Both the position numbers and the translations under genes were made by a program. This document shows positions 11,243 through 59,778 of a stretch of DNA of 64,000 nt, one piece after another. The stretch spans positions 62,001 to 126,000 of IMG/VR virus record IMGVR_UViG_3300010430_000003. One strand, 5' to 3'. How positions within the stretch are numbered: position 1 is the stretch's first letter; each line of letters begins with the position of its first letter. A model generated the notes under the pieces. It saw only the letters and a list, made by a program, of their open reading frames with translations. It was not told the origin of the DNA and did no database searches.

Positions 11243-11620
11243 ATGTCTGAAAAAAGCAACTGGTGGGAAACAGAGATGCTCAATCTTATGTTTCTCACGT
11301 ACGATCCAGTTTATGTAGCACTTTTTACAACTAATCCTGATGAAGATGCCTCTGGCACAGAAGCAACTGGTGGTTCATATGCAAGAGAATCTGTTGCAGC
11401 TTCTGTTTTTGTTGTTTTAACAGGATCTGCTGCTAATAATACAAATATTGAATTTACAGAAGCAACTGGCAACTGGGGCACTCTTTCTCATGCAGCCATC
11501 TTCACTTCTGCTTCTGGTGGAGATATGTTATATTACAGTCCGCTAGGAACATCAGTTGGAATTAACACAGGGCAAATCTTTAGAATTAACTCTGGCAGCT
11601 TGATTATATCGGAGGATTAA
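11243..11620 (+). CDS. small virion protein (tail-fibre-associated family), paralog 1
   Basis: YVALFTTNP...E.TGGSYAR...F.EATGNWGT.SH.AI...SGG.ML. Confidence 0.7.
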   Translation: MSEKSNWWETEMLNLMFLTYDPVYVALFTTNPDEDASGTEATGGSYARESVAASVFVVLTGSAANNTNIEFTEATGNWGTLSHAAIFTSASGGDMLYYSPLGTSVGINTGQIFRINSGSLIISED

Positions 11621-52127: not shown

Positions 52128-52375
52128 ATTTAAACATAATGATAGCAAGAGGTATCATTCATGATAAAACCAAGAACTTGTTGGGCTCCGATCCGTTAAG
52201 CTTTGAACTGAGAACATCGCTGCACACCGCAAGGAGAATAAGAAGTATCAAGGATGGTTGGGAGGTTAGCAACCCTTTTCCTTTATTGATCGCCTTGGAA
52301 GAAATAGATGAAACTGGACTCTTGAAAGTAAGCATAACAACTTTTATTGATAGAAGGCTATATGAAGAAATATAA
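52124..52375 (+). CDS. small ORF of the hNxxh family
   Basis: MNLNIMIARGII; ATGA overlap. Confidence 0.6.
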   Translation: MNLNIMIARGIIHDKTKNLLGSDPLSFELRTSLHTARRIRSIKDGWEVSNPFPLLIALEEIDETGLLKVSITTFIDRRLYEEI

Positions 52376-53969
52376 AACAGGAAATGAATTACTATTATCT
52401 CTCTTGGAAGGTTCGAGGAAGCTTGAGGAGAATGTCGCTTGCACTCTTGGACCGAGAGGCAACAATGTCATTTTAAGACCCTTGGGTAGTAATCCAATTA
52501 TCACTAAGGATGGTGTTACTGTTGCTAAGTTCACTGATCTTGAGGATGAGATTGAAGACTTGGCTTGTCAAATTCTTAAACAAGCTTCAATTGAAACAGT
52601 TAAAGAAGCTGGAGACGGAACAACAACCTCCACAGTTTTGGCGAATGCTATATTTACAGAGTCCTCTAAGTATATTCTTAGCGGGGTTACTCCTATCTCT
52701 CTTAAGCGAGGGATGGATAAAGCGGTCCGGAGAATCAATTGCGAGATTGAAAAGAGAGCAACTCCGATATCAACAAAAGAAGATATAAAGAGTATTGCAA
52801 CAATATCATCTAATAACGATGCAGATATTGGTGATTTAATTGCTAATGCTGTGGATGGTATTGGCCGTGATGGTTCTATTGTGGTGGAAGATGGAAAGAG
52901 CACCCAAACAGTTCTTGAGTTTGTTGAAGGTTTAAGGCTACAGGGTGGTTTTCAATCACATCATTTTGCCAATGATAATATTAGAAATGTTGTATCATAC
53001 AAGGATCCTTATTTTCTGATTACAGACCATGTAATTGATGATTTGGAAGAACAACTGCTTCCCGTACTTCAACTTGTACTAAGAGATAAAAAGCCTCTAA
53101 TCATTATTGCTGATGGTTATGGCGAAGAAGTAAGTGCTGCTTGTATCTACAACGCTCTTCAGTCTAGAAAGAATTTGAATAACGCTGTAAAAGTAGCTTG
53201 CTTAAAGGCTCCATCTTTTGGAGAAGAGAGAACTAAGGTTCTTGAGGATGTTGCTATTTCTGTGGGAGCTAAGTTCTTCAGTATGTTTGCTGGTGATAAT
53301 ATTGCTGATGCTAAATTAATTGATTTGGGGGGTGCTGAAAAGCTTGAGGCTAATGGTTACTTCACAACTATTATTGGCGGTATGGGTGAACCAGAAAGGA
53401 TTGAAGAAAGGATTGATGCTCTAAAGGAAGAAATTGATAACGCCCCCGTTAACGAAGGGGCTAGAATTCAAGAAAGAATTACACGGCTTGGCTCTGTTGT
53501 TGCTATCATTAAGGTTGGTGGTCACACTGATGTAGAAGTCGGTGAGATTAAAGATAGAGTTAATGACGCGCTTGAAGCCGTCAATTCAGCTAGGATTGAA
53601 GGGGTGGTAGCAGGAGGAGGTAGCACTCTTCTTAATATTGCTCTTAGGCTCGAAGAAGAAAGATATGAAGAGTCTGATCTCTTTAATGAAGAAGAAAAGA
53701 TAGGGGTGAGAATTTTATTAGAGAGCATTAAGTCTCCGTTTAAAAGAATCGCTCTTAACTCTGGTTTTTCATGGGAGGTTCTAGTAAATAAAGTCAAAGA
53801 GCAAGAAGGAGAAATGGGTGTAGATTTCGTCACAGGAGAGCTTAAAGACTTAAAGGAAGAGGGAATTATTGACCCCGCTAAAGTCACTAGAGTTGCTCTG
53901 CAAAACGCGATATCAGCAGCCTCAACACTTATTACAACAAATAATGCTATTGTCGAAATTCCTCACTAA
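52362..53969 (+). CDS. groEL: chaperonin GroEL-like protein
   Basis: TLGPRG, ITKDGVTVA, AGDGTTTSTVLA, GVVAGGG, IIDPAKV. Confidence 0.96.
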   Translation: MKKYKTGNELLLSLLEGSRKLEENVACTLGPRGNNVILRPLGSNPIITKDGVTVAKFTDLEDEIEDLACQILKQASIETVKEAGDGTTTSTVLANAIFTESSKYILSGVTPISLKRGMDKAVRRINCEIEKRATPISTKEDIKSIATISSNNDADIGDLIANAVDGIGRDGSIVVEDGKSTQTVLEFVEGLRLQGGFQSHHFANDNIRNVVSYKDPYFLITDHVIDDLEEQLLPVLQLVLRDKKPLIIIADGYGEEVSAACIYNALQSRKNLNNAVKVACLKAPSFGEERTKVLEDVAISVGAKFFSMFAGDNIADAKLIDLGGAEKLEANGYFTTIIGGMGEPERIEERIDALKEEIDNAPVNEGARIQERITRLGSVVAIIKVGGHTDVEVGEIKDRVNDALEAVNSARIEGVVAGGGSTLLNIALRLEEERYEESDLFNEEEKIGVRILLESIKSPFKRIALNSGFSWEVLVNKVKEQEGEMGVDFVTGELKDLKEEGIIDPAKVTRVALQNAISAASTLITTNNAIVEIPH

Positions 53970-55991: not shown

Positions 55992-57188
55992 ATGGCAGAC
56001 CAAGTTTTTCATGAAATCTCTTTCTCGGAATTCACTCGCGTAGCACCGTACATTATTGACGCGGGTTATCCAATCATGCTTCGTGGGAAGCATGGAATTG
56101 GAAAATCAGAATTGGTTTATTGGCTTGCAGAACATCACTGCAAGCTTCCAATTGTTGAGCGGCGAGCTAGTCAAATGGATGTGGGTGACCTTGTTGGTCT
56201 ACCCGTTCTTAAAGATGGGAACACTGGCTTTGCTCCACCGGATTGGTTGGCACGAGCATGTAATGAGCCTGTTGCCCTTTTCCTTGACGAAGTGGATCGT
56301 GCTACATTGGAAGTAGCACAAGGTATTTTCGAACTTTGTGATTCTCGGAAGATCTACGGTAACACACTTCACCCCGGAACTAAGGTCTTTGCTGCTGTTA
56401 ACGGCGGCGCTTCTGGTTCACAATATCAAGTGCGCGAGATGGATCCTGCTGAGCTAGACCGGTGGTCAGTATTTGATGTTCGTCCATCTGTGGATGATTG
56501 GCTTGAGTGGGCTTCCAATTATGGAAAGGTTGAGAACATTGTTCTTGAGTTCCTTGCTGGTAATCGGGAGCATCTTGAGAATATCAACGAACATGACGCA
56601 AGCATTGTTTATCCCTCCCGTCGTTCTTGGGTGCGATTTGATCGCGTGCTTAAGCAGATTAATGATTCCGGGGGTGATTTCTATACCTTCAAGGGTTTGG
56701 AAAACATTGGATCATCCATCATTGGTCTTTCCGCTGCGGTAGCGTTCGGTGAGTTTGTTCGAACTTACAATACTGCTGTTACTTTCGAGGATGTCCTTAA
56801 AGGTAATAAAAAGAAGAAGTGGAAAGACTTGGATTTCGAGCAATACAACATGATTGGTCGTTACCTGAAACATCAAGCTCCGGAAAGCCCTGACTACTGG
56901 CGCACAAACGAAGTCGAACAACCAGAACCAACCTCCAGCGAAATGAACAATGTTCGTGAATTCCTGTTGGAGTGTCCTGACGAAATCCTGATTAACGTGA
57001 CGCGCCTCGCTCACCCAATGGTTTCATCAACCCTCACCTCTCCTCCCCGTACTCTTCGAAACAAAAAGCGCAAGAGTGCTAAGGACAAGAAATCTCTCAA
57101 GCTCATGGAGAGCCTTAAGACCAAAATGCGAGAGGCTTCTGTGTATATGGCCAATAAGGCTGACGAAGAAAAGGCTGAAAAAGAATAA
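55992..57188 (+). CDS. MoxR/AAA_5-type ATPase (second copy)
   Basis: GKHGIGKS, FLDEVDRA, AAVN, MDPAELDRW, PSRRSW. Confidence 0.9.
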   Translation: MADQVFHEISFSEFTRVAPYIIDAGYPIMLRGKHGIGKSELVYWLAEHHCKLPIVERRASQMDVGDLVGLPVLKDGNTGFAPPDWLARACNEPVALFLDEVDRATLEVAQGIFELCDSRKIYGNTLHPGTKVFAAVNGGASGSQYQVREMDPAELDRWSVFDVRPSVDDWLEWASNYGKVENIVLEFLAGNREHLENINEHDASIVYPSRRSWVRFDRVLKQINDSGGDFYTFKGLENIGSSIIGLSAAVAFGEFVRTYNTAVTFEDVLKGNKKKKWKDLDFEQYNMIGRYLKHQAPESPDYWRTNEVEQPEPTSSEMNNVREFLLECPDEILINVTRLAHPMVSSTLTSPPRTLRNKKRKSAKDKKSLKLMESLKTKMREASVYMANKADEEKAEKE

Positions 57189-57224
57189 GTTCGCGGAAGG
57201 TGAGGCCACCTATTTTAAGAGCCA

Positions 57225-57329
57225 TCGTGTGAGCTAGATCTGGGGTGCTTGTTCATTCATTGTACTTTGGGCGACATCTATTCGTTTCCTAAAGTCAGAA
57301 CAAGGCGGGGTTCAATTCCCCCACACGTA
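57225..57329 (+). ncRNA. tRNA-like RNA with an extended inner arm
   Basis: CGTGTG/CACACG acceptor-like stem, GGGG-TTCAATT-CCCC T-arm, CTTGTTC/GAACAAG and ACTTTGG/CTAAAGT inner stems. Confidence 0.6.
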
Positions 57330-57344
57330 CTTTAAGGAGGTTTA

Positions 57345-57689
57345 ATGAAGAAGTTAATTATTGTTGCATTGTTGTTATGTGGTTGTATAACAACCAAGAG
57401 TGTGGCAGATGAAAGAGCAGAAACAGTTGAGTATATCAATCAATCTTTAGAAGATGCTAAGGCAGAGAGATTCTTACTTGAAGTAATGTATCTGTGGGGA
57501 GAAGGTAAGCCCTTTTATGTTACGAGAGTTGATATTATCAATATAGCGCAAGATTCTGATGAGCAGCTTGCTTGGTTTTGTACCTTAACAACGATTGATA
57601 AATTATCAGGAGCAACAACATCTAAGAAGTTTTCTGTCCCTGTGGACCGTACATTTAGCGGACATAACTTTGTTATTAGTTGGTATTGA
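57345..57689 (+). CDS. putative lipoprotein
   Basis: MKKLIIVALLLCGC lipobox-like signal; RBS AAGGAGG. Confidence 0.7.
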   Translation: MKKLIIVALLLCGCITTKSVADERAETVEYINQSLEDAKAERFLLEVMYLWGEGKPFYVTRVDIINIAQDSDEQLAWFCTLTTIDKLSGATTSKKFSVPVDRTFSGHNFVISWY

Positions 57690-57694
57690 TCTTT

Positions 57695-57766
57695 TCGGAG
57701 ATCGTCTAACTGGCAAGACACAGGACTTTGAATCCTGCAATCTAGGTTCGAACCCTAGTCTCCGAA
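57695..57766 (+). tRNA. tRNA-Gln(TTG), CCA not encoded
   Basis: TCGGAGA/TCTCCGA acceptor, GTCT/AGAC D stem, CAGGA-CTTTGAA-TCCTG anticodon arm, CTAGG-TTCGAAC-CCTAG T arm. Confidence 0.95.
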
Positions 57767-57767
57767 T

Positions 57768-58022
57768 ATGAATGTGGAAAGAAATGTGCATATGGAAAAA
57801 GATATTAGAATAGCTCATTTTAAATATGATGTTAATTTGTATTTAGCTTCTCTTGTAATTTGGGAATATGGCATCTTCTACTACGGTCGCGTCCGCTCAC
57901 GACATCATAATTTATATACGAGTAGCATATTAGAAATTGACATCCCTAATATTTTAGGGACCCTTATGGTCATAGGGAAGTTCCCCAAGCCATTCAGAGA
58001 AATCAATAAATACTATGAATAG
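57768..58022 (+). CDS. small ORF with an hNxxh module
   Basis: DVNLYLASLVIW. Confidence 0.5.
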   Translation: MNVERNVHMEKDIRIAHFKYDVNLYLASLVIWEYGIFYYGRVRSRHHNLYTSSILEIDIPNILGTLMVIGKFPKPFREINKYYE

Positions 58023-58209
58023 AACTTTAGTATTAATTTTTGGTTTTGGTGTAGAGATTATATTAGTGCAGCTAATTCAATTAGCTTCTTACAAAGATAT
58101 GATTTGGTTATGCTATATTCTATTATTTGTAGTGCTGTTTGTTTGTATTTATTGGTGGTATAATTTCTGGCTATGTGTGGGATTTAATAAATGGCGAGAG
58201 AGAATCTAG
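58015..58209 (+). CDS. small membrane protein
   Basis: Two hydrophobic segments. Confidence 0.55.
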   Translation: MNRTLVLIFGFGVEIILVQLIQLASYKDMIWLCYILLFVVLFVCIYWWYNFWLCVGFNKWRERI

Positions 58210-58213
58210 TACA

Positions 58214-58254
58214 TAAAAAATTACTGTTGAAAAACTGTGATAGTTAACTATAAT
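58214..58254 (+). promoter_or_regulatory. early promoter
   Basis: TAAAAAATT-N4-TTGAAAAACTGTG-N5-AACTATAAT (TTGAAA-N16-TATAAT). Confidence 0.75.
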
Positions 58255-58290
58255 AGAAAAATGACAGGGTATTTTGAAAAGGAACTGTAA

Positions 58291-59778
58291 GTGAATAAAC
58301 CAGACGGTATTTCTAAAGAAGAATTCTTCAAGGAATTGGATAAGCTTGTTGAACTCGATAAGAAGGCTAAAAAGTATAGTCTTTCTAGAGATGTTCTTGC
58401 ATTGCTTAAGGATGAACCATTCTTTGCATGCGTATCTCGCTTTGTTACAAAAAGGCGAACAACCCAAATTCCAACTGCGGCGATTTATATCGACAAGAAG
58501 ACATTTCGCCCCGTGATGATTTACAACCCTCGCTTTATGGTTTCTTTGCCGATGGAACAACGCAAGGGAATTATTAAACATGAGTATTATCATCTGATTC
58601 TGAACCACATCACCCAGAATCGGATGGACTTCAATAAGAAGAACCAGAAGCTTTGGAATGTTGCAATGGATCTTGCAATCAACTCCTTTCTTATGGAAGA
58701 ACTCCCAGACTTTGCTCTATTTCCAACTAAGGGGATGTTTAAAGACATGCCAGCAGAGAAATCTTCTGAATGGTATAAACAAGCAATCCTTAACGACGAG
58801 GACGTGCTTGAGCAGTTAGGTTTAGATGAAAACGGTGAACCAAAGCCTTGTCCTAACTGTGGCGGGTCAGGTAATGTCTCATCTGATGAAGATGGTGAGC
58901 AACAAGGCCAAGGTAATGGTGGGGAGGAAGGACAAGAAGGACAAAGTCAAGGTGGGCATAGTCACGGTGATAGTGATCAAGAGTGTGACTGTGACAGTGG
59001 GCAGTGTTCTCATAACCCCGGAGAAGGTGGTGGAGGGGGAGGTAATGTAAAGCCATGCCCTTGTTGTAATAATCATGGCATTGATGATCATTCTTTGTGG
59101 GATGATTTGTCGGAAGAAGAAAGAAACATTGTAGAGAAAAAGATGCGGCGAGTTCTTTCTGATGCTGTCCATGAAGCAAAGCGGCAAAATAACTCCAAGG
59201 GTTGGGGTACTGTTTCTGTTCATGTTCAAGGGTATCTTGAAAAGCTTCTTAAGAATAGCCTTAATTGGAAAGGCATTCTGCGAATGTTTGTTCAAGCTTC
59301 TATCAAGGCTGAACGGTATTCTACCATTAAGAAAGTTAACAAGAGGTATCCATGGCTCCATCCGGGTAAGGCTCGTCGAAGGACAGCTAATATTGCTGTG
59401 GCTATTGATCAGTCAGGTTCAGTTGGTAATGTTCTCCTAACTAAGTTCTTTGCGGAATTGAACGCTCTAAGCAAAATTGTAACCTTTACTGTGATTCCTT
59501 TTGATCATGAGGTCTTTGAAGAAAAGGTCTATAAGTGGCAAAAAGGGCAAAAGTTTGAACCTCACAGGGTATTGTGTGGAGGTACTGATTTCTCTGCACC
59601 AACTAGGTATGCTAATGAAAACGGTCCGTTTGATGGTTTGATTATGCTTACCGATATGGAAGCCCCTGAACCTATTCCTGCTCGAATGCAGCGAATCTGG
59701 GTAACTTCTGAATCCTGTGCACGTAGTATGTACTACAAGCCCACCTCTGAAAGAGTTCTAGTGATTCCTGATGAGTGA
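58291..59778 (+). CDS. metallopeptidase + VWA-like protein (second copy) with a Cys/Gly-rich insert
   Basis: IKHEYYH, WNVAMDLAIN, DQSGS, GGTDF, LTD; insert CPNC...CDC...CPCC. Confidence 0.88.
   Translation: MNKPDGISKEEFFKELDKLVELDKKAKKYSLSRDVLALLKDEPFFACVSRFVTKRRTTQIPTAAIYIDKKTFRPVMIYNPRFMVSLPMEQRKGIIKHEYYHLILNHITQNRMDFNKKNQKLWNVAMDLAINSFLMEELPDFALFPTKGMFKDMPAEKSSEWYKQAILNDEDVLEQLGLDENGEPKPCPNCGGSGNVSSDEDGEQQGQGNGGEEGQEGQSQGGHSHGDSDQECDCDSGQCSHNPGEGGGGGGNVKPCPCCNNHGIDDHSLWDDLSEEERNIVEKKMRRVLSDAVHEAKRQNNSKGWGTVSVHVQGYLEKLLKNSLNWKGILRMFVQASIKAERYSTIKKVNKRYPWLHPGKARRRTANIAVAIDQSGSVGNVLLTKFFAELNALSKIVTFTVIPFDHEVFEEKVYKWQKGQKFEPHRVLCGGTDFSAPTRYANENGPFDGLIMLTDMEAPEPIPARMQRIWVTSESCARSMYYKPTSERVLVIPDE

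What the first reader, a model, noticed from the sequence alone, without database searches (positions are those of the whole stretch)
57225..57329. tRNA-like RNA no. 1: intact acceptor/T-arm, anticodon arm replaced by a long compound hairpin
The intergenic DNA after the second AAA gene folds as an acceptor stem CGTGTG/CACACG, a T-arm GGGG-TTCAATT-CCCC and a GG-containing D-like loop. The anticodon position is a ~57-nt arm made of CTTGTTC/GAACAAG, ACTTTGG/CTAAAGT and GCGA/TCGT, with no canonical anticodon loop. It is too short for tmRNA. Inference: a tRNA mimic (decoy for anticodon nucleases or synthetases, or a Y-RNA-like molecule), an intron-containing tRNA, or an RNase P/Z processing signal.
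Basis: partly seen in the sequence, partly recalled or inferred. Interest (0 to 1): 0.68.

Follow-up and report, generated by a model that had tools for sequence, protein, structure and literature searches.

The report
Conserved non-decoding tRNA-like phage RNA
A T4-like jumbo phage from marine sediment carries a small gene for an RNA that folds like a tRNA, but a long bulged rod replaces the anticodon arm; evolution has kept this shape, so it is probably a working tRNA mimic of unknown job, like the unexplained small RNAs in phage T4's tRNA cluster.

Summary
Window 57226-57329 (+) folds into a cloverleaf:
- a 6-bp acceptor stem plus a U.U layer;
- a 3-bp D stem whose loop carries GG;
- a 4-bp T stem with a canonical UUCAAUU loop;
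- in the anticodon position, a 57-nt arm (7 + 2 + 8 bp) with a 6-7 nt bulge, AUUCAU(U).

ARAGORN and Rfam do not call it a tRNA.

One related phage lineage (L045; flanking ATPase 87% identical) has the same element. All 30 modelled pairs are kept, 5 by changes on both sides, and one extra base pair is inserted. Four-fold degenerate sites in flanking genes are only about 50% identical, against 77% for the element. This indicates a selected RNA, not a decaying tRNA.

It is unlikely to be an intron-bearing tRNA:
- there is no bulge-helix-bulge motif;
- none of 636 in-silico excisions per lineage gives an ARAGORN-recognisable tRNA;
- no splicing enzyme was found in the phage;
- the genome uses the standard code.

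It is not tmRNA and not a YrlA-type Y RNA, although YrlA-like modules lie elsewhere in the genome.

The best reading is a stable, non-decoding tRNA mimic, released by the host's tRNA-processing enzymes. The closest analogue is T4 species 1 RNA (rnaC). Its function is inferred, because no RNA data exist.

The parts
57198..57216 (+). Small conserved hairpin (AGGUG-AGGC-CACCU) plus a U tract, directly after the stop codon of the MoxR-type ATPase gene. It looks like a weak terminator or a 3'-end stabiliser, and lies upstream of the RNA.
   Evidence: Sequence. It is conserved in L045 with a single loop change. The strict terminator scan did not call it.
57217..57225 (+). 9-nt leader AAGAGCCAU, identical in both lineages. 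Presumed to be the 5' leader removed by RNase P (inference).
   Evidence: Alignments. A similar leader precedes the tRNA-Ile of the same genome.
57226..57231 (+). Acceptor stem, 5' strand (CGUGUG). It pairs with 57322-57327. The neighbouring U57225 and U57328 form a U.U layer.
   Evidence: 6 of 6 pairs, invariant in both lineages.
57233..57246 (+). D arm: a 3-bp stem (57233-57235 with 57244-57246) and an 8-nt loop, AGAUCUGG, carrying the GG.
   Evidence: GCU/GGU in the window becomes AUC/GAU in L045: one change on both sides and two on one side, all still paired.
57248..57254 (+). Outer helix of the long arm, 5' strand (CUUGUUC). It pairs with 57298-57304 and stands in the anticodon-stem position.
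   Evidence: One change on both sides (G-C to A-U), and one whole base pair inserted in L045.
57255..57261 (+). Strictly conserved unpaired AUUCAU(U), a bulge where an anticodon loop would sit. The opposite strand of the arm has no unpaired base.
   Evidence: identical in both lineages. The MFE fold leaves 57255-57260 unpaired and pairs U57261-A57297.
57261..57297 (+). Inner hairpin: UG/CA (2 bp), a 1-nt bulge, the 8-bp stem ACUUUGGG/CCUAAAGU, and a 16-nt apical loop (57272-57287) whose sequence varies between lineages.
   Evidence: Two changes on both sides in the 8-bp stem; the apical loop is poorly conserved.
57298..57304 (+). Outer helix of the long arm, 3' strand (GAACAAG).
57307..57321 (+). 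T arm: a 4-bp stem GGGG/CCCC and the canonical T loop UUCAAUU.
   Evidence: GGGG/CCCC becomes GAGG/CCUC in L045 (a change on both sides).
57322..57329 (+). Acceptor stem, 3' strand (CACACG), then U and an A in the discriminator position. No CCA is encoded, as in the four other tRNA-type genes of this phage that were inspected (Gln, Ile, the His-like tRNA and element B).
57694..57767 (+). Neighbouring canonical tRNA-Gln(UUG). With the element it opens the phage's 22-kb region of scattered tRNA genes.

Best explanation
Window 57226-57329 encodes a small (about 104 nt before any CCA addition), selected, non-decoding tRNA-like RNA of a T4-like jumbo phage.

Shown:
- It has a cloverleaf whose acceptor stem, D arm with GG, and T arm with UUCAAUU can form the tRNA 'elbow' and acceptor/T minihelix.
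- Where the anticodon stem-loop would be, it has a 17-18 bp rod with an invariant AUUCAU(U) bulge on one strand only. It therefore has no usable anticodon loop.
- Two phage lineages keep the fold through compensatory changes.

Inferred:
- It is transcribed with, or just after, the upstream MoxR-type ATPase gene.
- Host tRNA-processing enzymes cut it out: RNase P at the 5' end of the acceptor stem, then 3' trimming and CCA addition.
- It accumulates as a stable RNA.
- It acts as a tRNA mimic that binds (titrates or recruits) a host or phage factor that recognises tRNA. The invariant acceptor stem and the invariant bulge would be the specific contacts. The covarying hairpin would be a strut that presents the bulge and keeps the RNA out of the ribosome.

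It is the counterpart in kind, not in sequence, of the two odd stable RNAs (rnaC and rnaD) in phage T4's tRNA cluster.
For: - Fold: the MFE folds of both lineages and RNAalifold agree.
- Covariation: 30 of 30 pairs are standard in both lineages. Five have changes on both sides, spread over the D stem, outer helix, inner helix and T stem. One base pair is inserted. There are 0 such changes in all slid controls.
- Selection: the element is 77% identical, against 50-51% at four-fold degenerate sites of the ATPase, GroEL, 114-aa and DUF2201 genes.
- Unpaired tRNA signature nucleotides (D-loop GG, T-loop UUCAAYU) and the bulge are invariant, while the apical loop is free to vary.
- It is not a decoding tRNA. 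ARAGORN and Rfam are negative. None of 636 single excisions per lineage gives an ARAGORN tRNA.
- Context: it sits 365 nt before tRNA-Gln, at the start of a region with 5 further tRNA genes and a second odd tRNA-like gene. A more distant relative has an ordinary tRNA-Ile(UAU) at the same spot after the ATPase gene.
- The phage is T4-like, with a gp23 capsid match at 3e-66.
- T4 rnaC read from its record has a canonical T arm, a mismatched 7-layer acceptor stem and long hairpins between them. It gives the same Rfam signature: only a sub-threshold tRNA-Sec hit, 17.5 bits against 15.2 bits here.
- T4 RNAC and RNAD are reported as expressed, with function unknown (PMC3014915; PMC9697503).
Against: - No transcript data exist. 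Only DNA runs from marine sediment hold this phage. Expression, the RNA ends, CCA addition and stability are all inferred.
- Only two sequence variants could be read, so the covariation rests on one pairwise comparison. The shuffle controls are only moderately extreme (14 of 500).
- The acceptor/T stack has 10 Watson-Crick layers plus a U.U, not the canonical 12. There is only 1 nt between the acceptor and D stems, and 2 nt of variable region. Recognition by RNase P and the CCA-adding enzyme is plausible but untested.
- No binding partner is identified. The phage encodes no Ro60, RtcB, CCA-adding enzyme or RNase III.
- The z-scores of the single-sequence folds are modest: -2.06 and -0.89.
Confidence: 0.55

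Rival explanations
1. It is a tRNA gene interrupted by a short intron-like insertion of about 35-37 nt beside the anticodon loop, like the 'enigmatic introns' reported in tRNAs of huge phages. The insertion would be removed to give a decoding tRNA, for example with loop AUUCAUA/AUUCAUU and anticodon UCA.
For: - The 7 nt AUUCAUU follow a 5-7 bp stem exactly where an anticodon loop sits, with U in the position of U33. The hairpin is inserted just 3' of it.
- With thresholds lowered to 70%, ARAGORN forces a 'tRNA-Arg(tct) + 36-nt intron'.
- Lak megaphage tRNAs with unexplained introns are on record (10.1101/356790).
- A second gene of this genome, 137408-137533, is accepted by Rfam tRNA (37.9 bits) with 69 nt in place of the anticodon arm.
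Against: - There is no bulge-helix-bulge. The 3' strand of the arm is fully paired and both bulges lie on the 5' strand.
- None of 636 excisions in either lineage is recognised by ARAGORN at default settings.
- Position 37 would be U or C, not a purine.
- No EndA, RtcB or T4-type RNA ligase 1 was detected in the phage (the Rnl1 search had no positive control).
- Bacteria have no known tRNA-splicing endonuclease (general knowledge).
- The insertion is far too short for a group I intron.
- An opal-suppressor reading is not supported. Code 11 gives 91% coding density, and TGA ends 118 of 275 ORFs.
Confidence: 0.12
2. It has no function as a free RNA. It is a tRNA-shaped processing signal ('punctuation'). 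RNase P and 3' enzymes cut there to separate the ATPase mRNA from the downstream mRNA, or to set their stabilities.
For: - It lies between two same-strand ORFs. It starts 37 nt after one stop codon, and its 3' end lies 5 nt before the Shine-Dalgarno sequence and 15 nt before the start codon of the next ORF.
- No sigma-70-like promoter was found directly upstream.
- Leader and trailer are invariant.
Against: A processing signal needs only the acceptor/T minihelix. That does not explain the invariant 6-7 nt bulge, or the compensatory maintenance of 17-18 bp of arm and of the D stem. Ordinary tRNA genes already serve this purpose nearby.
Confidence: 0.12
3. It is an RNase P-matured antisense regulator, as I recall for P1/P7 C4 RNA and P4 CI RNA (from memory, not checked). 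The exposed UUCAUU would pair with AAUGAA at translation start sites, first of all that of the ORF immediately downstream.
For: UUCAUU is complementary to AAUGAA at the start codon of the next ORF in both lineages, although those ORFs are different genes. Only 10 of 113 (9%) SD-preceded ATG starts in the genome carry AAUGAA.
Against: The match is only 6 AU-rich base pairs and was noticed post hoc. Exact 9-mer targets elsewhere in the genome (6) are about what chance gives. No second complementary segment was found.
Confidence: 0.08
4. It is a decaying tRNA pseudogene hit by an insertion, with no function.
For: tRNA detectors reject it. The acceptor, T and D stems are shorter than canonical. 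A relative has a normal tRNA at this site.
Against: It is 77% identical where neutral sites are about 50% identical. All 30 pairs are preserved, five by double changes, and one indel is compensated. Ten window-type copies and three L045-type copies from different samples are each identical.
Confidence: 0.03

Closest known systems
Phage T4 species 1 RNA (rnaC), with its neighbour species 2 RNA (rnaD)
   Same: - Small RNA genes inside the tRNA region of a T4-type phage.
- rnaC has a canonical T arm (CCGGG-UUCGAAU-CCCGG) followed by an acceptor-like 3' strand that pairs with the 5' end, with U.U mismatches. Long hairpins stand where tRNA arms would be.
- Rfam has no family for it and gives only a weak tRNA-Sec hit, as for this element.
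- Function unknown (PMC3014915; PMC9697503).
   Different: - There is no sequence or model-level homology: model R2 finds nothing in the T4 locus.
- In rnaC the long hairpin sits in the D-arm position, and a second hairpin precedes the T arm. Here a real 3-bp D arm is kept, and the single long arm replaces the anticodon arm.
- rnaC has a 7/5-layer stack; this RNA has 6(+U.U)/4.
tRNAs with 'enigmatic introns' in Lak megaphages and other huge phages (10.1101/356790)
   Same: Oversized tRNA-like genes in large phage genomes, with insertions in the anticodon region. They are conserved, and no splicing mechanism is known.
   Different: The Lak genes are recognisable tRNAs once the insertion is removed (eukaryotic tRNAscan mode assigns a type and an anticodon). 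Here no excision gives a recognisable tRNA, and the body is itself non-canonical. The host here is unknown; the Lak phages use an alternative genetic code, whereas this phage uses code 11.
Bacterial Y RNAs with a tRNA-like domain (YrlA, Rfam RF02553; D. radiodurans Yrn1)
   Same: Non-decoding RNAs that mimic the tRNA elbow (T arm, D arm, acceptor-like stem). tRNA enzymes accept them: TruB, DusA, and RNase P with CCA addition for M. smegmatis YrlA (PMC4201824). The same phage genome carries YrlA-like modules elsewhere.
   Different: - YrlA is circularly permuted: the acceptor is closed by a loop, and the ends lie in a Ro60-binding stem. This element has normal tRNA topology.
- The RF02553 model does not hit it.
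- There is no Ro60/TROVE gene in the phage.
- No Ro-binding helix was identified.
tRNA-like domain of tmRNA
   Same: Acceptor stem, a GG-bearing D loop, a T arm, and a long helix leaving from the anticodon-stem position.
   Different: - About 105 nt, against 260-420 nt.
- No G3.U70.
- No pseudoknots.
- The only frame ending in a stop inside the arm is not conserved in L045 (read by eye from the sequences).
- ARAGORN tmRNA mode is negative even at 50% threshold.
- No tmRNA hit in Rfam at E up to 10.
tRNA-Pyl and mitochondrial tRNA-Ser(UCN) type compact tRNAs
   Same: One nucleotide between the acceptor and D stems, a lengthened anticodon stem and a very short variable region (PMC7609411).
   Different: Those have a normal 7-nt anticodon loop closing the stem, and they decode. 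This RNA has a 35-nt hairpin inserted after the loop-like heptamer.

Membership tests
Canonical tRNA (Rfam RF00005 / ARAGORN) | Scores above the curated threshold of a tRNA model | tested here: not met
   No RF00005 hit at gathering score, nor at E up to 10 on the local 351 nt. Overlapping matches within one clan are collapsed to the best, so a weaker RF00005 match under the tRNA-Sec hit cannot be excluded. ARAGORN default is negative.
Canonical tRNA (Rfam RF00005 / ARAGORN) | 5-bp anticodon stem closed by a 7-nt loop with U33 and a purine at position 37 | tested here: not met
   A 7-8 bp stem is followed by AUUCAUU and then a 35-nt hairpin before the 3' strand. No closed 7-nt loop exists.
Canonical tRNA (Rfam RF00005 / ARAGORN) | 12-layer acceptor/T stack (7 + 5 bp) | tested here: not met
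   6 Watson-Crick pairs plus a U.U layer, and a 4-bp T stem flanked by a conserved C.C.
Canonical tRNA (Rfam RF00005 / ARAGORN) | T loop UUCRANY and D-loop GG, for the elbow | tested here: met
   UUCAAUU / UUCAACU and GAUCUGG are conserved in both lineages.
Intron-containing tRNA (endonuclease-spliced) | Bulge-helix-bulge motif at the splice sites (or a relaxed form of it) | tested here: not met
   Both bulges are on the 5' strand. The 3' strand 57288-57304 is continuously paired in the MFE and consensus folds.
Intron-containing tRNA (endonuclease-spliced) | Excision yields a recognisable tRNA | tested here: not met
   636 deletion variants in each of two lineages gave 0 ARAGORN calls.
Intron-containing tRNA (endonuclease-spliced) | Splicing endonuclease and ligase available | tested here: inconclusive
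   No PF01974, PF01139 or PF09511 match in the phage. The PF09511 search had no positive control. The host is unknown.
Group I intron in a tRNA anticodon loop | A catalytic core of roughly 200 nt or more | tested here: not met
   The insertion is 35-43 nt. No intron or ribozyme family appears in Rfam at E up to 10.
tmRNA | G3.U70, a tag reading frame with a resume codon, pseudoknots, and a length over 250 nt | tested here: not met
   Acceptor pairs are C-G, G-C, U-A and so on. ARAGORN -m is negative. No conserved frame between lineages (sequence).
YrlA / bacterial Y RNA (RF02553) | Permuted tRNA-like domain (T arm, closed acceptor hairpin, D arm) inside a terminal Ro-binding stem | tested here: not met
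   The order here is acceptor-5', D, long arm, T, acceptor-3'. There is no RF02553 hit. The same model does hit genome 157473-157587 (-) over its full length at 24.2 bits.
YrlA / bacterial Y RNA (RF02553) | A Ro60 (TROVE) gene nearby | tested here: not met
   No PF05731 match in the 210-kb genome; the controls were positive.
tRNA-Sec (RF01852) | Score at or above the gathering score; 8/5 or 9/4 stack; UCA anticodon loop | tested here: not met
   15.2 bits against 47, with an alignment that starts inside the D loop. TGA is an ordinary stop in the genome.
T4-type odd stable RNAs of the tRNA region (rnaC/rnaD kind) | Encoded among the tRNA genes of a T4-like phage | tested here: met
   gp23 capsid match at 3e-66. 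tRNA-Gln lies 365 nt downstream, and 5 more tRNA genes follow within 22 kb on the same strand.
T4-type odd stable RNAs of the tRNA region (rnaC/rnaD kind) | tRNA-like T arm and acceptor stem combined with non-tRNA arms | tested here: met
   for this RNA; for T4 rnaC.
T4-type odd stable RNAs of the tRNA region (rnaC/rnaD kind) | Sequence or model homology to T4 rnaC or rnaD | tested here: not met
   Model R2 has no match in the T4 locus L153. So this is a likeness of kind, not shown common descent.
T4-type odd stable RNAs of the tRNA region (rnaC/rnaD kind) | Accumulates as a discrete stable RNA during infection | not testable with these tools
   No RNA run holds the phage.

The most novel reading that the evidence does not exclude
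The RNA is a new class of phage counter-defence or takeover RNA. It would be matured like a tRNA, with a 'pseudo-anticodon' heptamer displayed as a one-sided bulge on a continuous helix. A host factor that targets the anticodon loop or the acceptor end (an anticodon nuclease, a toxin, or a modification or charging enzyme) would bind it. The factor could not disable it, because a cut in the bulge leaves the two halves held together by 17-18 bp. The RNA also could not enter the ribosome. Together with the second odd tRNA-like gene and the YrlA-like modules of the same genome, it would be part of a set of tRNA mimics.
Probability: 0.2. Interest if true: 0.8.

Novelty: new variant of a known kind. 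Interest (0 to 1): 0.52.

Why it matters
Phages are known to carry tRNAs that replace or shield host tRNAs attacked by defence nucleases. Phage T4 has carried two unexplained tRNA-cluster RNAs for fifty years. Huge phages carry tRNAs with unexplained insertions.

This element is a clean, evolutionarily supported example of a tRNA body whose decoding end has been swapped for a different, conserved structure. The design gives two obvious handles for experiment: an invariant bulge and an invariant acceptor stem.

If it proves to be a decoy or adaptor for a tRNA-binding factor, it would suggest a function to test for a neglected class of phage RNAs. It would also give a search pattern for finding more of them, since standard tRNA finders and Rfam miss it.

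Tried and rejected
Searches for more homologues of the element:
- GenBank phages, near and distant BLAST: no match.
- IMG/VR pattern scans with three different patterns: no match.
- JGI metagenome pattern scan: 90 hits, but only two are the element (L100, L126), both identical to the window. The rest are ordinary tRNAs or chance matches.
- GTDB genome scan: 61 hits, none matched by model R2.
- Model R1 over 41 related IMG/VR phage records: no match.
- Flanks of 43 ATPase homologues: no tRNA at all.
- Protein-guided contig look-ups gave just two variants: ten identical window-type copies (window included) and three identical L045-type copies.

Other tests:
- Sequencing runs: only marine-sediment DNA. 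No RNA, no variants, no joints.
- Paralogues in the genome: none for the whole element within the window and genome 126-186 kb, and none for the inner hairpin genome-wide, so it is not a repeated palindromic element.
- Promoter idea for the conserved leader motif TATTTTAAGA: its occurrences show no consistent gene context.
- Antisense targets of the bulge and D loop: about chance numbers.
- UGA recoding or suppressor reading: rejected.
- Homology of the element's body to the tRNA-Ile genes: the alignment is uninformative.
- tmRNA-like tag frame: not conserved.

Full report
**What is there.**
The window is bases 62001-126000 of a 210,326-bp virus record with direct terminal repeats, estimated complete. 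The phage has a T4 gp23-type major capsid protein (3e-66) and a GroEL gene. It also has a MoxR-type AAA_5 ATPase (55992-57188) and a DUF2201 VWA/metallopeptidase protein (58291-59778). The only public runs that hold it are marine-sediment DNA metagenomes. The genome reads well under the standard bacterial code: 91% coding density, with TGA ending 118 of 275 long ORFs.

The finding lies in the 156-nt gap between the ATPase gene and a 114-aa ORF (57345-57689). A canonical tRNA-Gln(UUG) follows at 57694-57767.

**Check of the observation.**
The MFE fold of 57225-57329 gives these parts:
- a 6-bp acceptor stem;
- a 4-bp T stem with the loop UUCAAUU;
- a long arm in which the 3' strand (57288-57304) is continuously paired, while the 5' strand carries a 6-nt bulge AUUCAU and a 1-nt bulge.

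The energy is only moderately better than shuffles (z = -2.06). ARAGORN, Rfam at gathering scores, and Rfam at E up to 10 do not recognise a tRNA, tmRNA or Y RNA here. The best hit is tRNA-Sec at 15.2 bits against a threshold of 47. ARAGORN draws a tRNA only when its threshold is lowered to 70%: 'Arg(tct)' with a 36-nt intron at a non-canonical place and a two-pair D stem.

**Comparative evidence.**
The ATPase has thousands of homologues, but only four closer than 60% identity.
- The 87% relative (Logan contig, locus L045) has the same element at L045:5239-5346.
- The 76% relative (L046) has no RNA there, and its ATPase and DUF2201 genes are nearly adjacent.
- The 63% relative (L047) has an ordinary tRNA-Ile(UAU) at the same place.

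A covariance model built from the window's structure finds the L045 copy at 82-84 bits and aligns every pair as a standard pair. Counting gives 30 of 30 pairs kept, 5 with changes on both sides:
- D stem: C-G to U-A;
- outer helix: G-C to A-U;
- inner helix: A-U to U-A, and C-G to A-U;
- T stem: G-C to A-U.

There are also four G-U/A-U-type single changes, and one whole base pair inserted in the outer helix. When the partners are slid by 1-3 columns, no pair shows a change on both sides, and pairing drops to 30-62%.

Four-fold degenerate sites of four flanking genes are 50-51% identical between the two phages. The element is 77% identical, and the identity is concentrated in these parts:
- the acceptor stem (12 of 12);
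- the 9-nt leader;
- the D loop;
- the bulge plus its two following bases;
- the T loop.

The apical loop of the inner hairpin is largely free to vary. This is the signature of a selected structured RNA. The limitation is that only two variants exist in the accessible data. Ten window-type copies (the window included) and three L045-type copies from different samples are each identical, and a third lineage could not be read.

**What it is not.**
- *Canonical tRNA.* The stack is 6 pairs plus a U.U on a 4-bp T stem. A single nucleotide separates the acceptor and D stems, the variable region is 2 nt, and there is no closed anticodon loop.
- *Endonuclease-spliced tRNA.* There is no bulge-helix-bulge. 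I deleted every segment of at least 20 nt inside the arm, 636 variants in each lineage, and ARAGORN at default settings recognised none. The phage has no detectable splicing endonuclease, RtcB, T4-type RNA ligase 1, RNase III or CCA-adding enzyme.
- *Group I intron.* The insertion is far too short.
- *Opal suppressor or Sec tRNA.* Nothing in the genome's stop-codon use supports this.
- *tmRNA.* It lacks G3.U70, pseudoknots and a conserved tag frame, and ARAGORN's tmRNA mode is negative.
- *YrlA-type Y RNA.* Its topology is not permuted, the YrlA model does not hit it, and no Ro60 gene is present.
- *Mobile palindrome.* The hairpin has no other copy in the genome.

**What it most likely is.**
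The element opens a 22-kb stretch in which tRNA genes are scattered among same-strand ORFs: Gln, Ile, Arg, Met and Leu. That stretch also holds a second oversized tRNA-like gene at genome 137408-137533. This gene has a perfect 8-bp acceptor stem, a D arm and a T arm, with 69 nt in place of the anticodon arm, and it scores 37.9 bits with Rfam tRNA.

That layout recalls phage T4, whose tRNA cluster holds eight tRNAs plus two 'small, stable' RNAs, rnaC and rnaD. Their roles remain unknown (PMC3014915; PMC9697503). Read from the T4 record, rnaC has a canonical T arm, an acceptor-like stem with two U.U mismatches, and long hairpins in between. Like the present element, it draws only a sub-threshold tRNA-Sec hit from Rfam (17.5 bits).

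I therefore file the element as a new variant of this kind: a phage-encoded, non-decoding tRNA-like RNA. There is no sequence homology to T4 rnaC, so the likeness is of kind, not of demonstrated descent.

**How it probably works (inferred).**
- No sigma-70-like promoter lies directly upstream. The nearest is before the ATPase gene.
- A small conserved hairpin with a U tract (57198-57216) follows the ATPase stop codon.
- The RNA is therefore probably made by read-through. It would be cut out by the host's RNase P and 3'-end enzymes and given CCA, like the phage's own tRNAs, none of which, among those inspected, encodes CCA.
- Bacterial tRNA mimics of this sort are known to be accepted by TruB, DusA, RNase P and the CCA-adding enzyme (YrlA; PMC4201824).

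The parts that are invariant despite saturated neutral divergence are the natural candidates for specific contacts with a partner: the acceptor stem and the one-sided AUUCAU(U) bulge, which sits where an anticodon loop would be. The covarying hairpin behind the bulge looks like a structural strut.

My preferred reading is a mimic that titrates or recruits a tRNA-recognising factor. I cannot name the factor.

One lead: UUCAUU is complementary to AAUGAA at the start codon of the next ORF in both lineages, although those ORFs differ. About 9% of starts in this genome have that hexamer. This is post hoc and only six AU-rich pairs, so I keep it as a minor rival (a cis or trans antisense role).

**Novelty and interest.**
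The RNA family itself is new. Nothing matched it in Rfam, GenBank phages, the IMG/VR and GTDB pattern scans, or 41 related phage records beyond the two lineages. But the kind is known from T4 rnaC/rnaD, the Lak-phage 'enigmatic introns' and bacterial Y RNAs: tRNA-derived RNAs in phage tRNA regions with a non-decoding middle.

It is a well-supported structure with an unknown function, of moderate interest. That interest would rise sharply if the bulge proves to be bait for a defence nuclease or another tRNA-binding factor.

Noticed in passing
L138:11408-11533 (+) = genome 137408-137533, outside the window: A second oversized tRNA-like gene. It has a perfect 8-bp acceptor stem, a D arm and a T arm, but 69 nt where the 15-nt anticodon arm should be. 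Rfam tRNA scores it 37.9 bits; ARAGORN -i calls it 'tRNA-Ser(act)' with a 50-nt intron and a poor anticodon stem. Model R1/R2 does not match it.
   Followed up: partly
L139:11473-11587 (-) = genome 157473-157587, outside the window: A full-length match (positions 1-114) to Rfam YrlA (Y RNA-like) at 24.2 bits, local E 0.0099, below the gathering score of 69. It consists of a T arm, an acceptor hairpin TCCGCCC/GGGCGGG and a D arm, enclosed by a terminal stem. The phage has no Ro60/TROVE and no RtcB gene.
   Followed up: partly
L139:about 11330-11405 (-) = genome about 157330-157405: Directly downstream of the YrlA-like RNA lies a second permuted module, seen by eye and in the MFE fold. It has a T arm GUGGG-UUCGAAU-CCCAC, then a 7-bp hairpin CGGGAAC/GUUCCUG, then a D-arm-like GUC..GG..GAC. 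The YrlA model did not call it.
   Followed up: no
L139:11176-11244 (-) = genome 157176-157244: A tRNA (Rfam 41.4 bits; anticodon loop UGUGAUG, probably GUG/His) that ARAGORN misses at default settings.
   Followed up: no
window 57198-57225, and genome 129468-129489 (L138:3468-3489): The leader of the element (GGCCACC-TATTTT-AAGAG) resembles the leader of the genome's tRNA-Ile(UAU) (TGGCACT-TATTTATT-AAGAG). In relative L047 a tRNA-Ile(UAU) sits exactly where the element sits here. This hints that the element took over a former tRNA-Ile site. Alignment of the RNA bodies was uninformative.
   Followed up: partly
window 57345-57689 (+): The 114-aa ORF after the element starts MKKLIIVALLLCGC, a lipoprotein-type signal with a lipobox-like LCGC. 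It has no Pfam or PHROG match. Only three lineages carry it in 5.8 billion proteins.
   Followed up: no
window 55992-59778; L046:4001-7015: The MoxR-type AAA_5 ATPase and the DUF2201 VWA/metallopeptidase gene form a pair that is nearly adjacent in L046. In this phage and in L045 the pair is split by about 1.1-1.5 kb holding the tRNA-like RNA, small ORFs and tRNA-Gln, so this spot is an insertion hotspot.
   Followed up: no
window 52347-53969 (+): A phage-encoded GroEL-type chaperonin (Pfam Cpn60_TCP1 1.5e-56; PHROG 5725 4.5e-126). It is at most about 39% identical to any GenBank phage or bacterial GroEL in the phage collection.
   Followed up: no
window 57344-57349; L045:5361-5366: AAUGAA at the start codon of the ORF following the element is complementary to the conserved bulge UUCAUU in both lineages, though the ORFs are different genes. 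10 of 113 SD-preceded starts in the genome have this hexamer.
   Followed up: partly
L153:2909-3047 (-) (phage T4 rnaC): T4 species 1 RNA gives only a sub-threshold tRNA-Sec hit in Rfam (17.5 bits), and no curated family covers it. A covariance model for this class of phage tRNA-like RNAs seems to be missing from Rfam.
   Followed up: no
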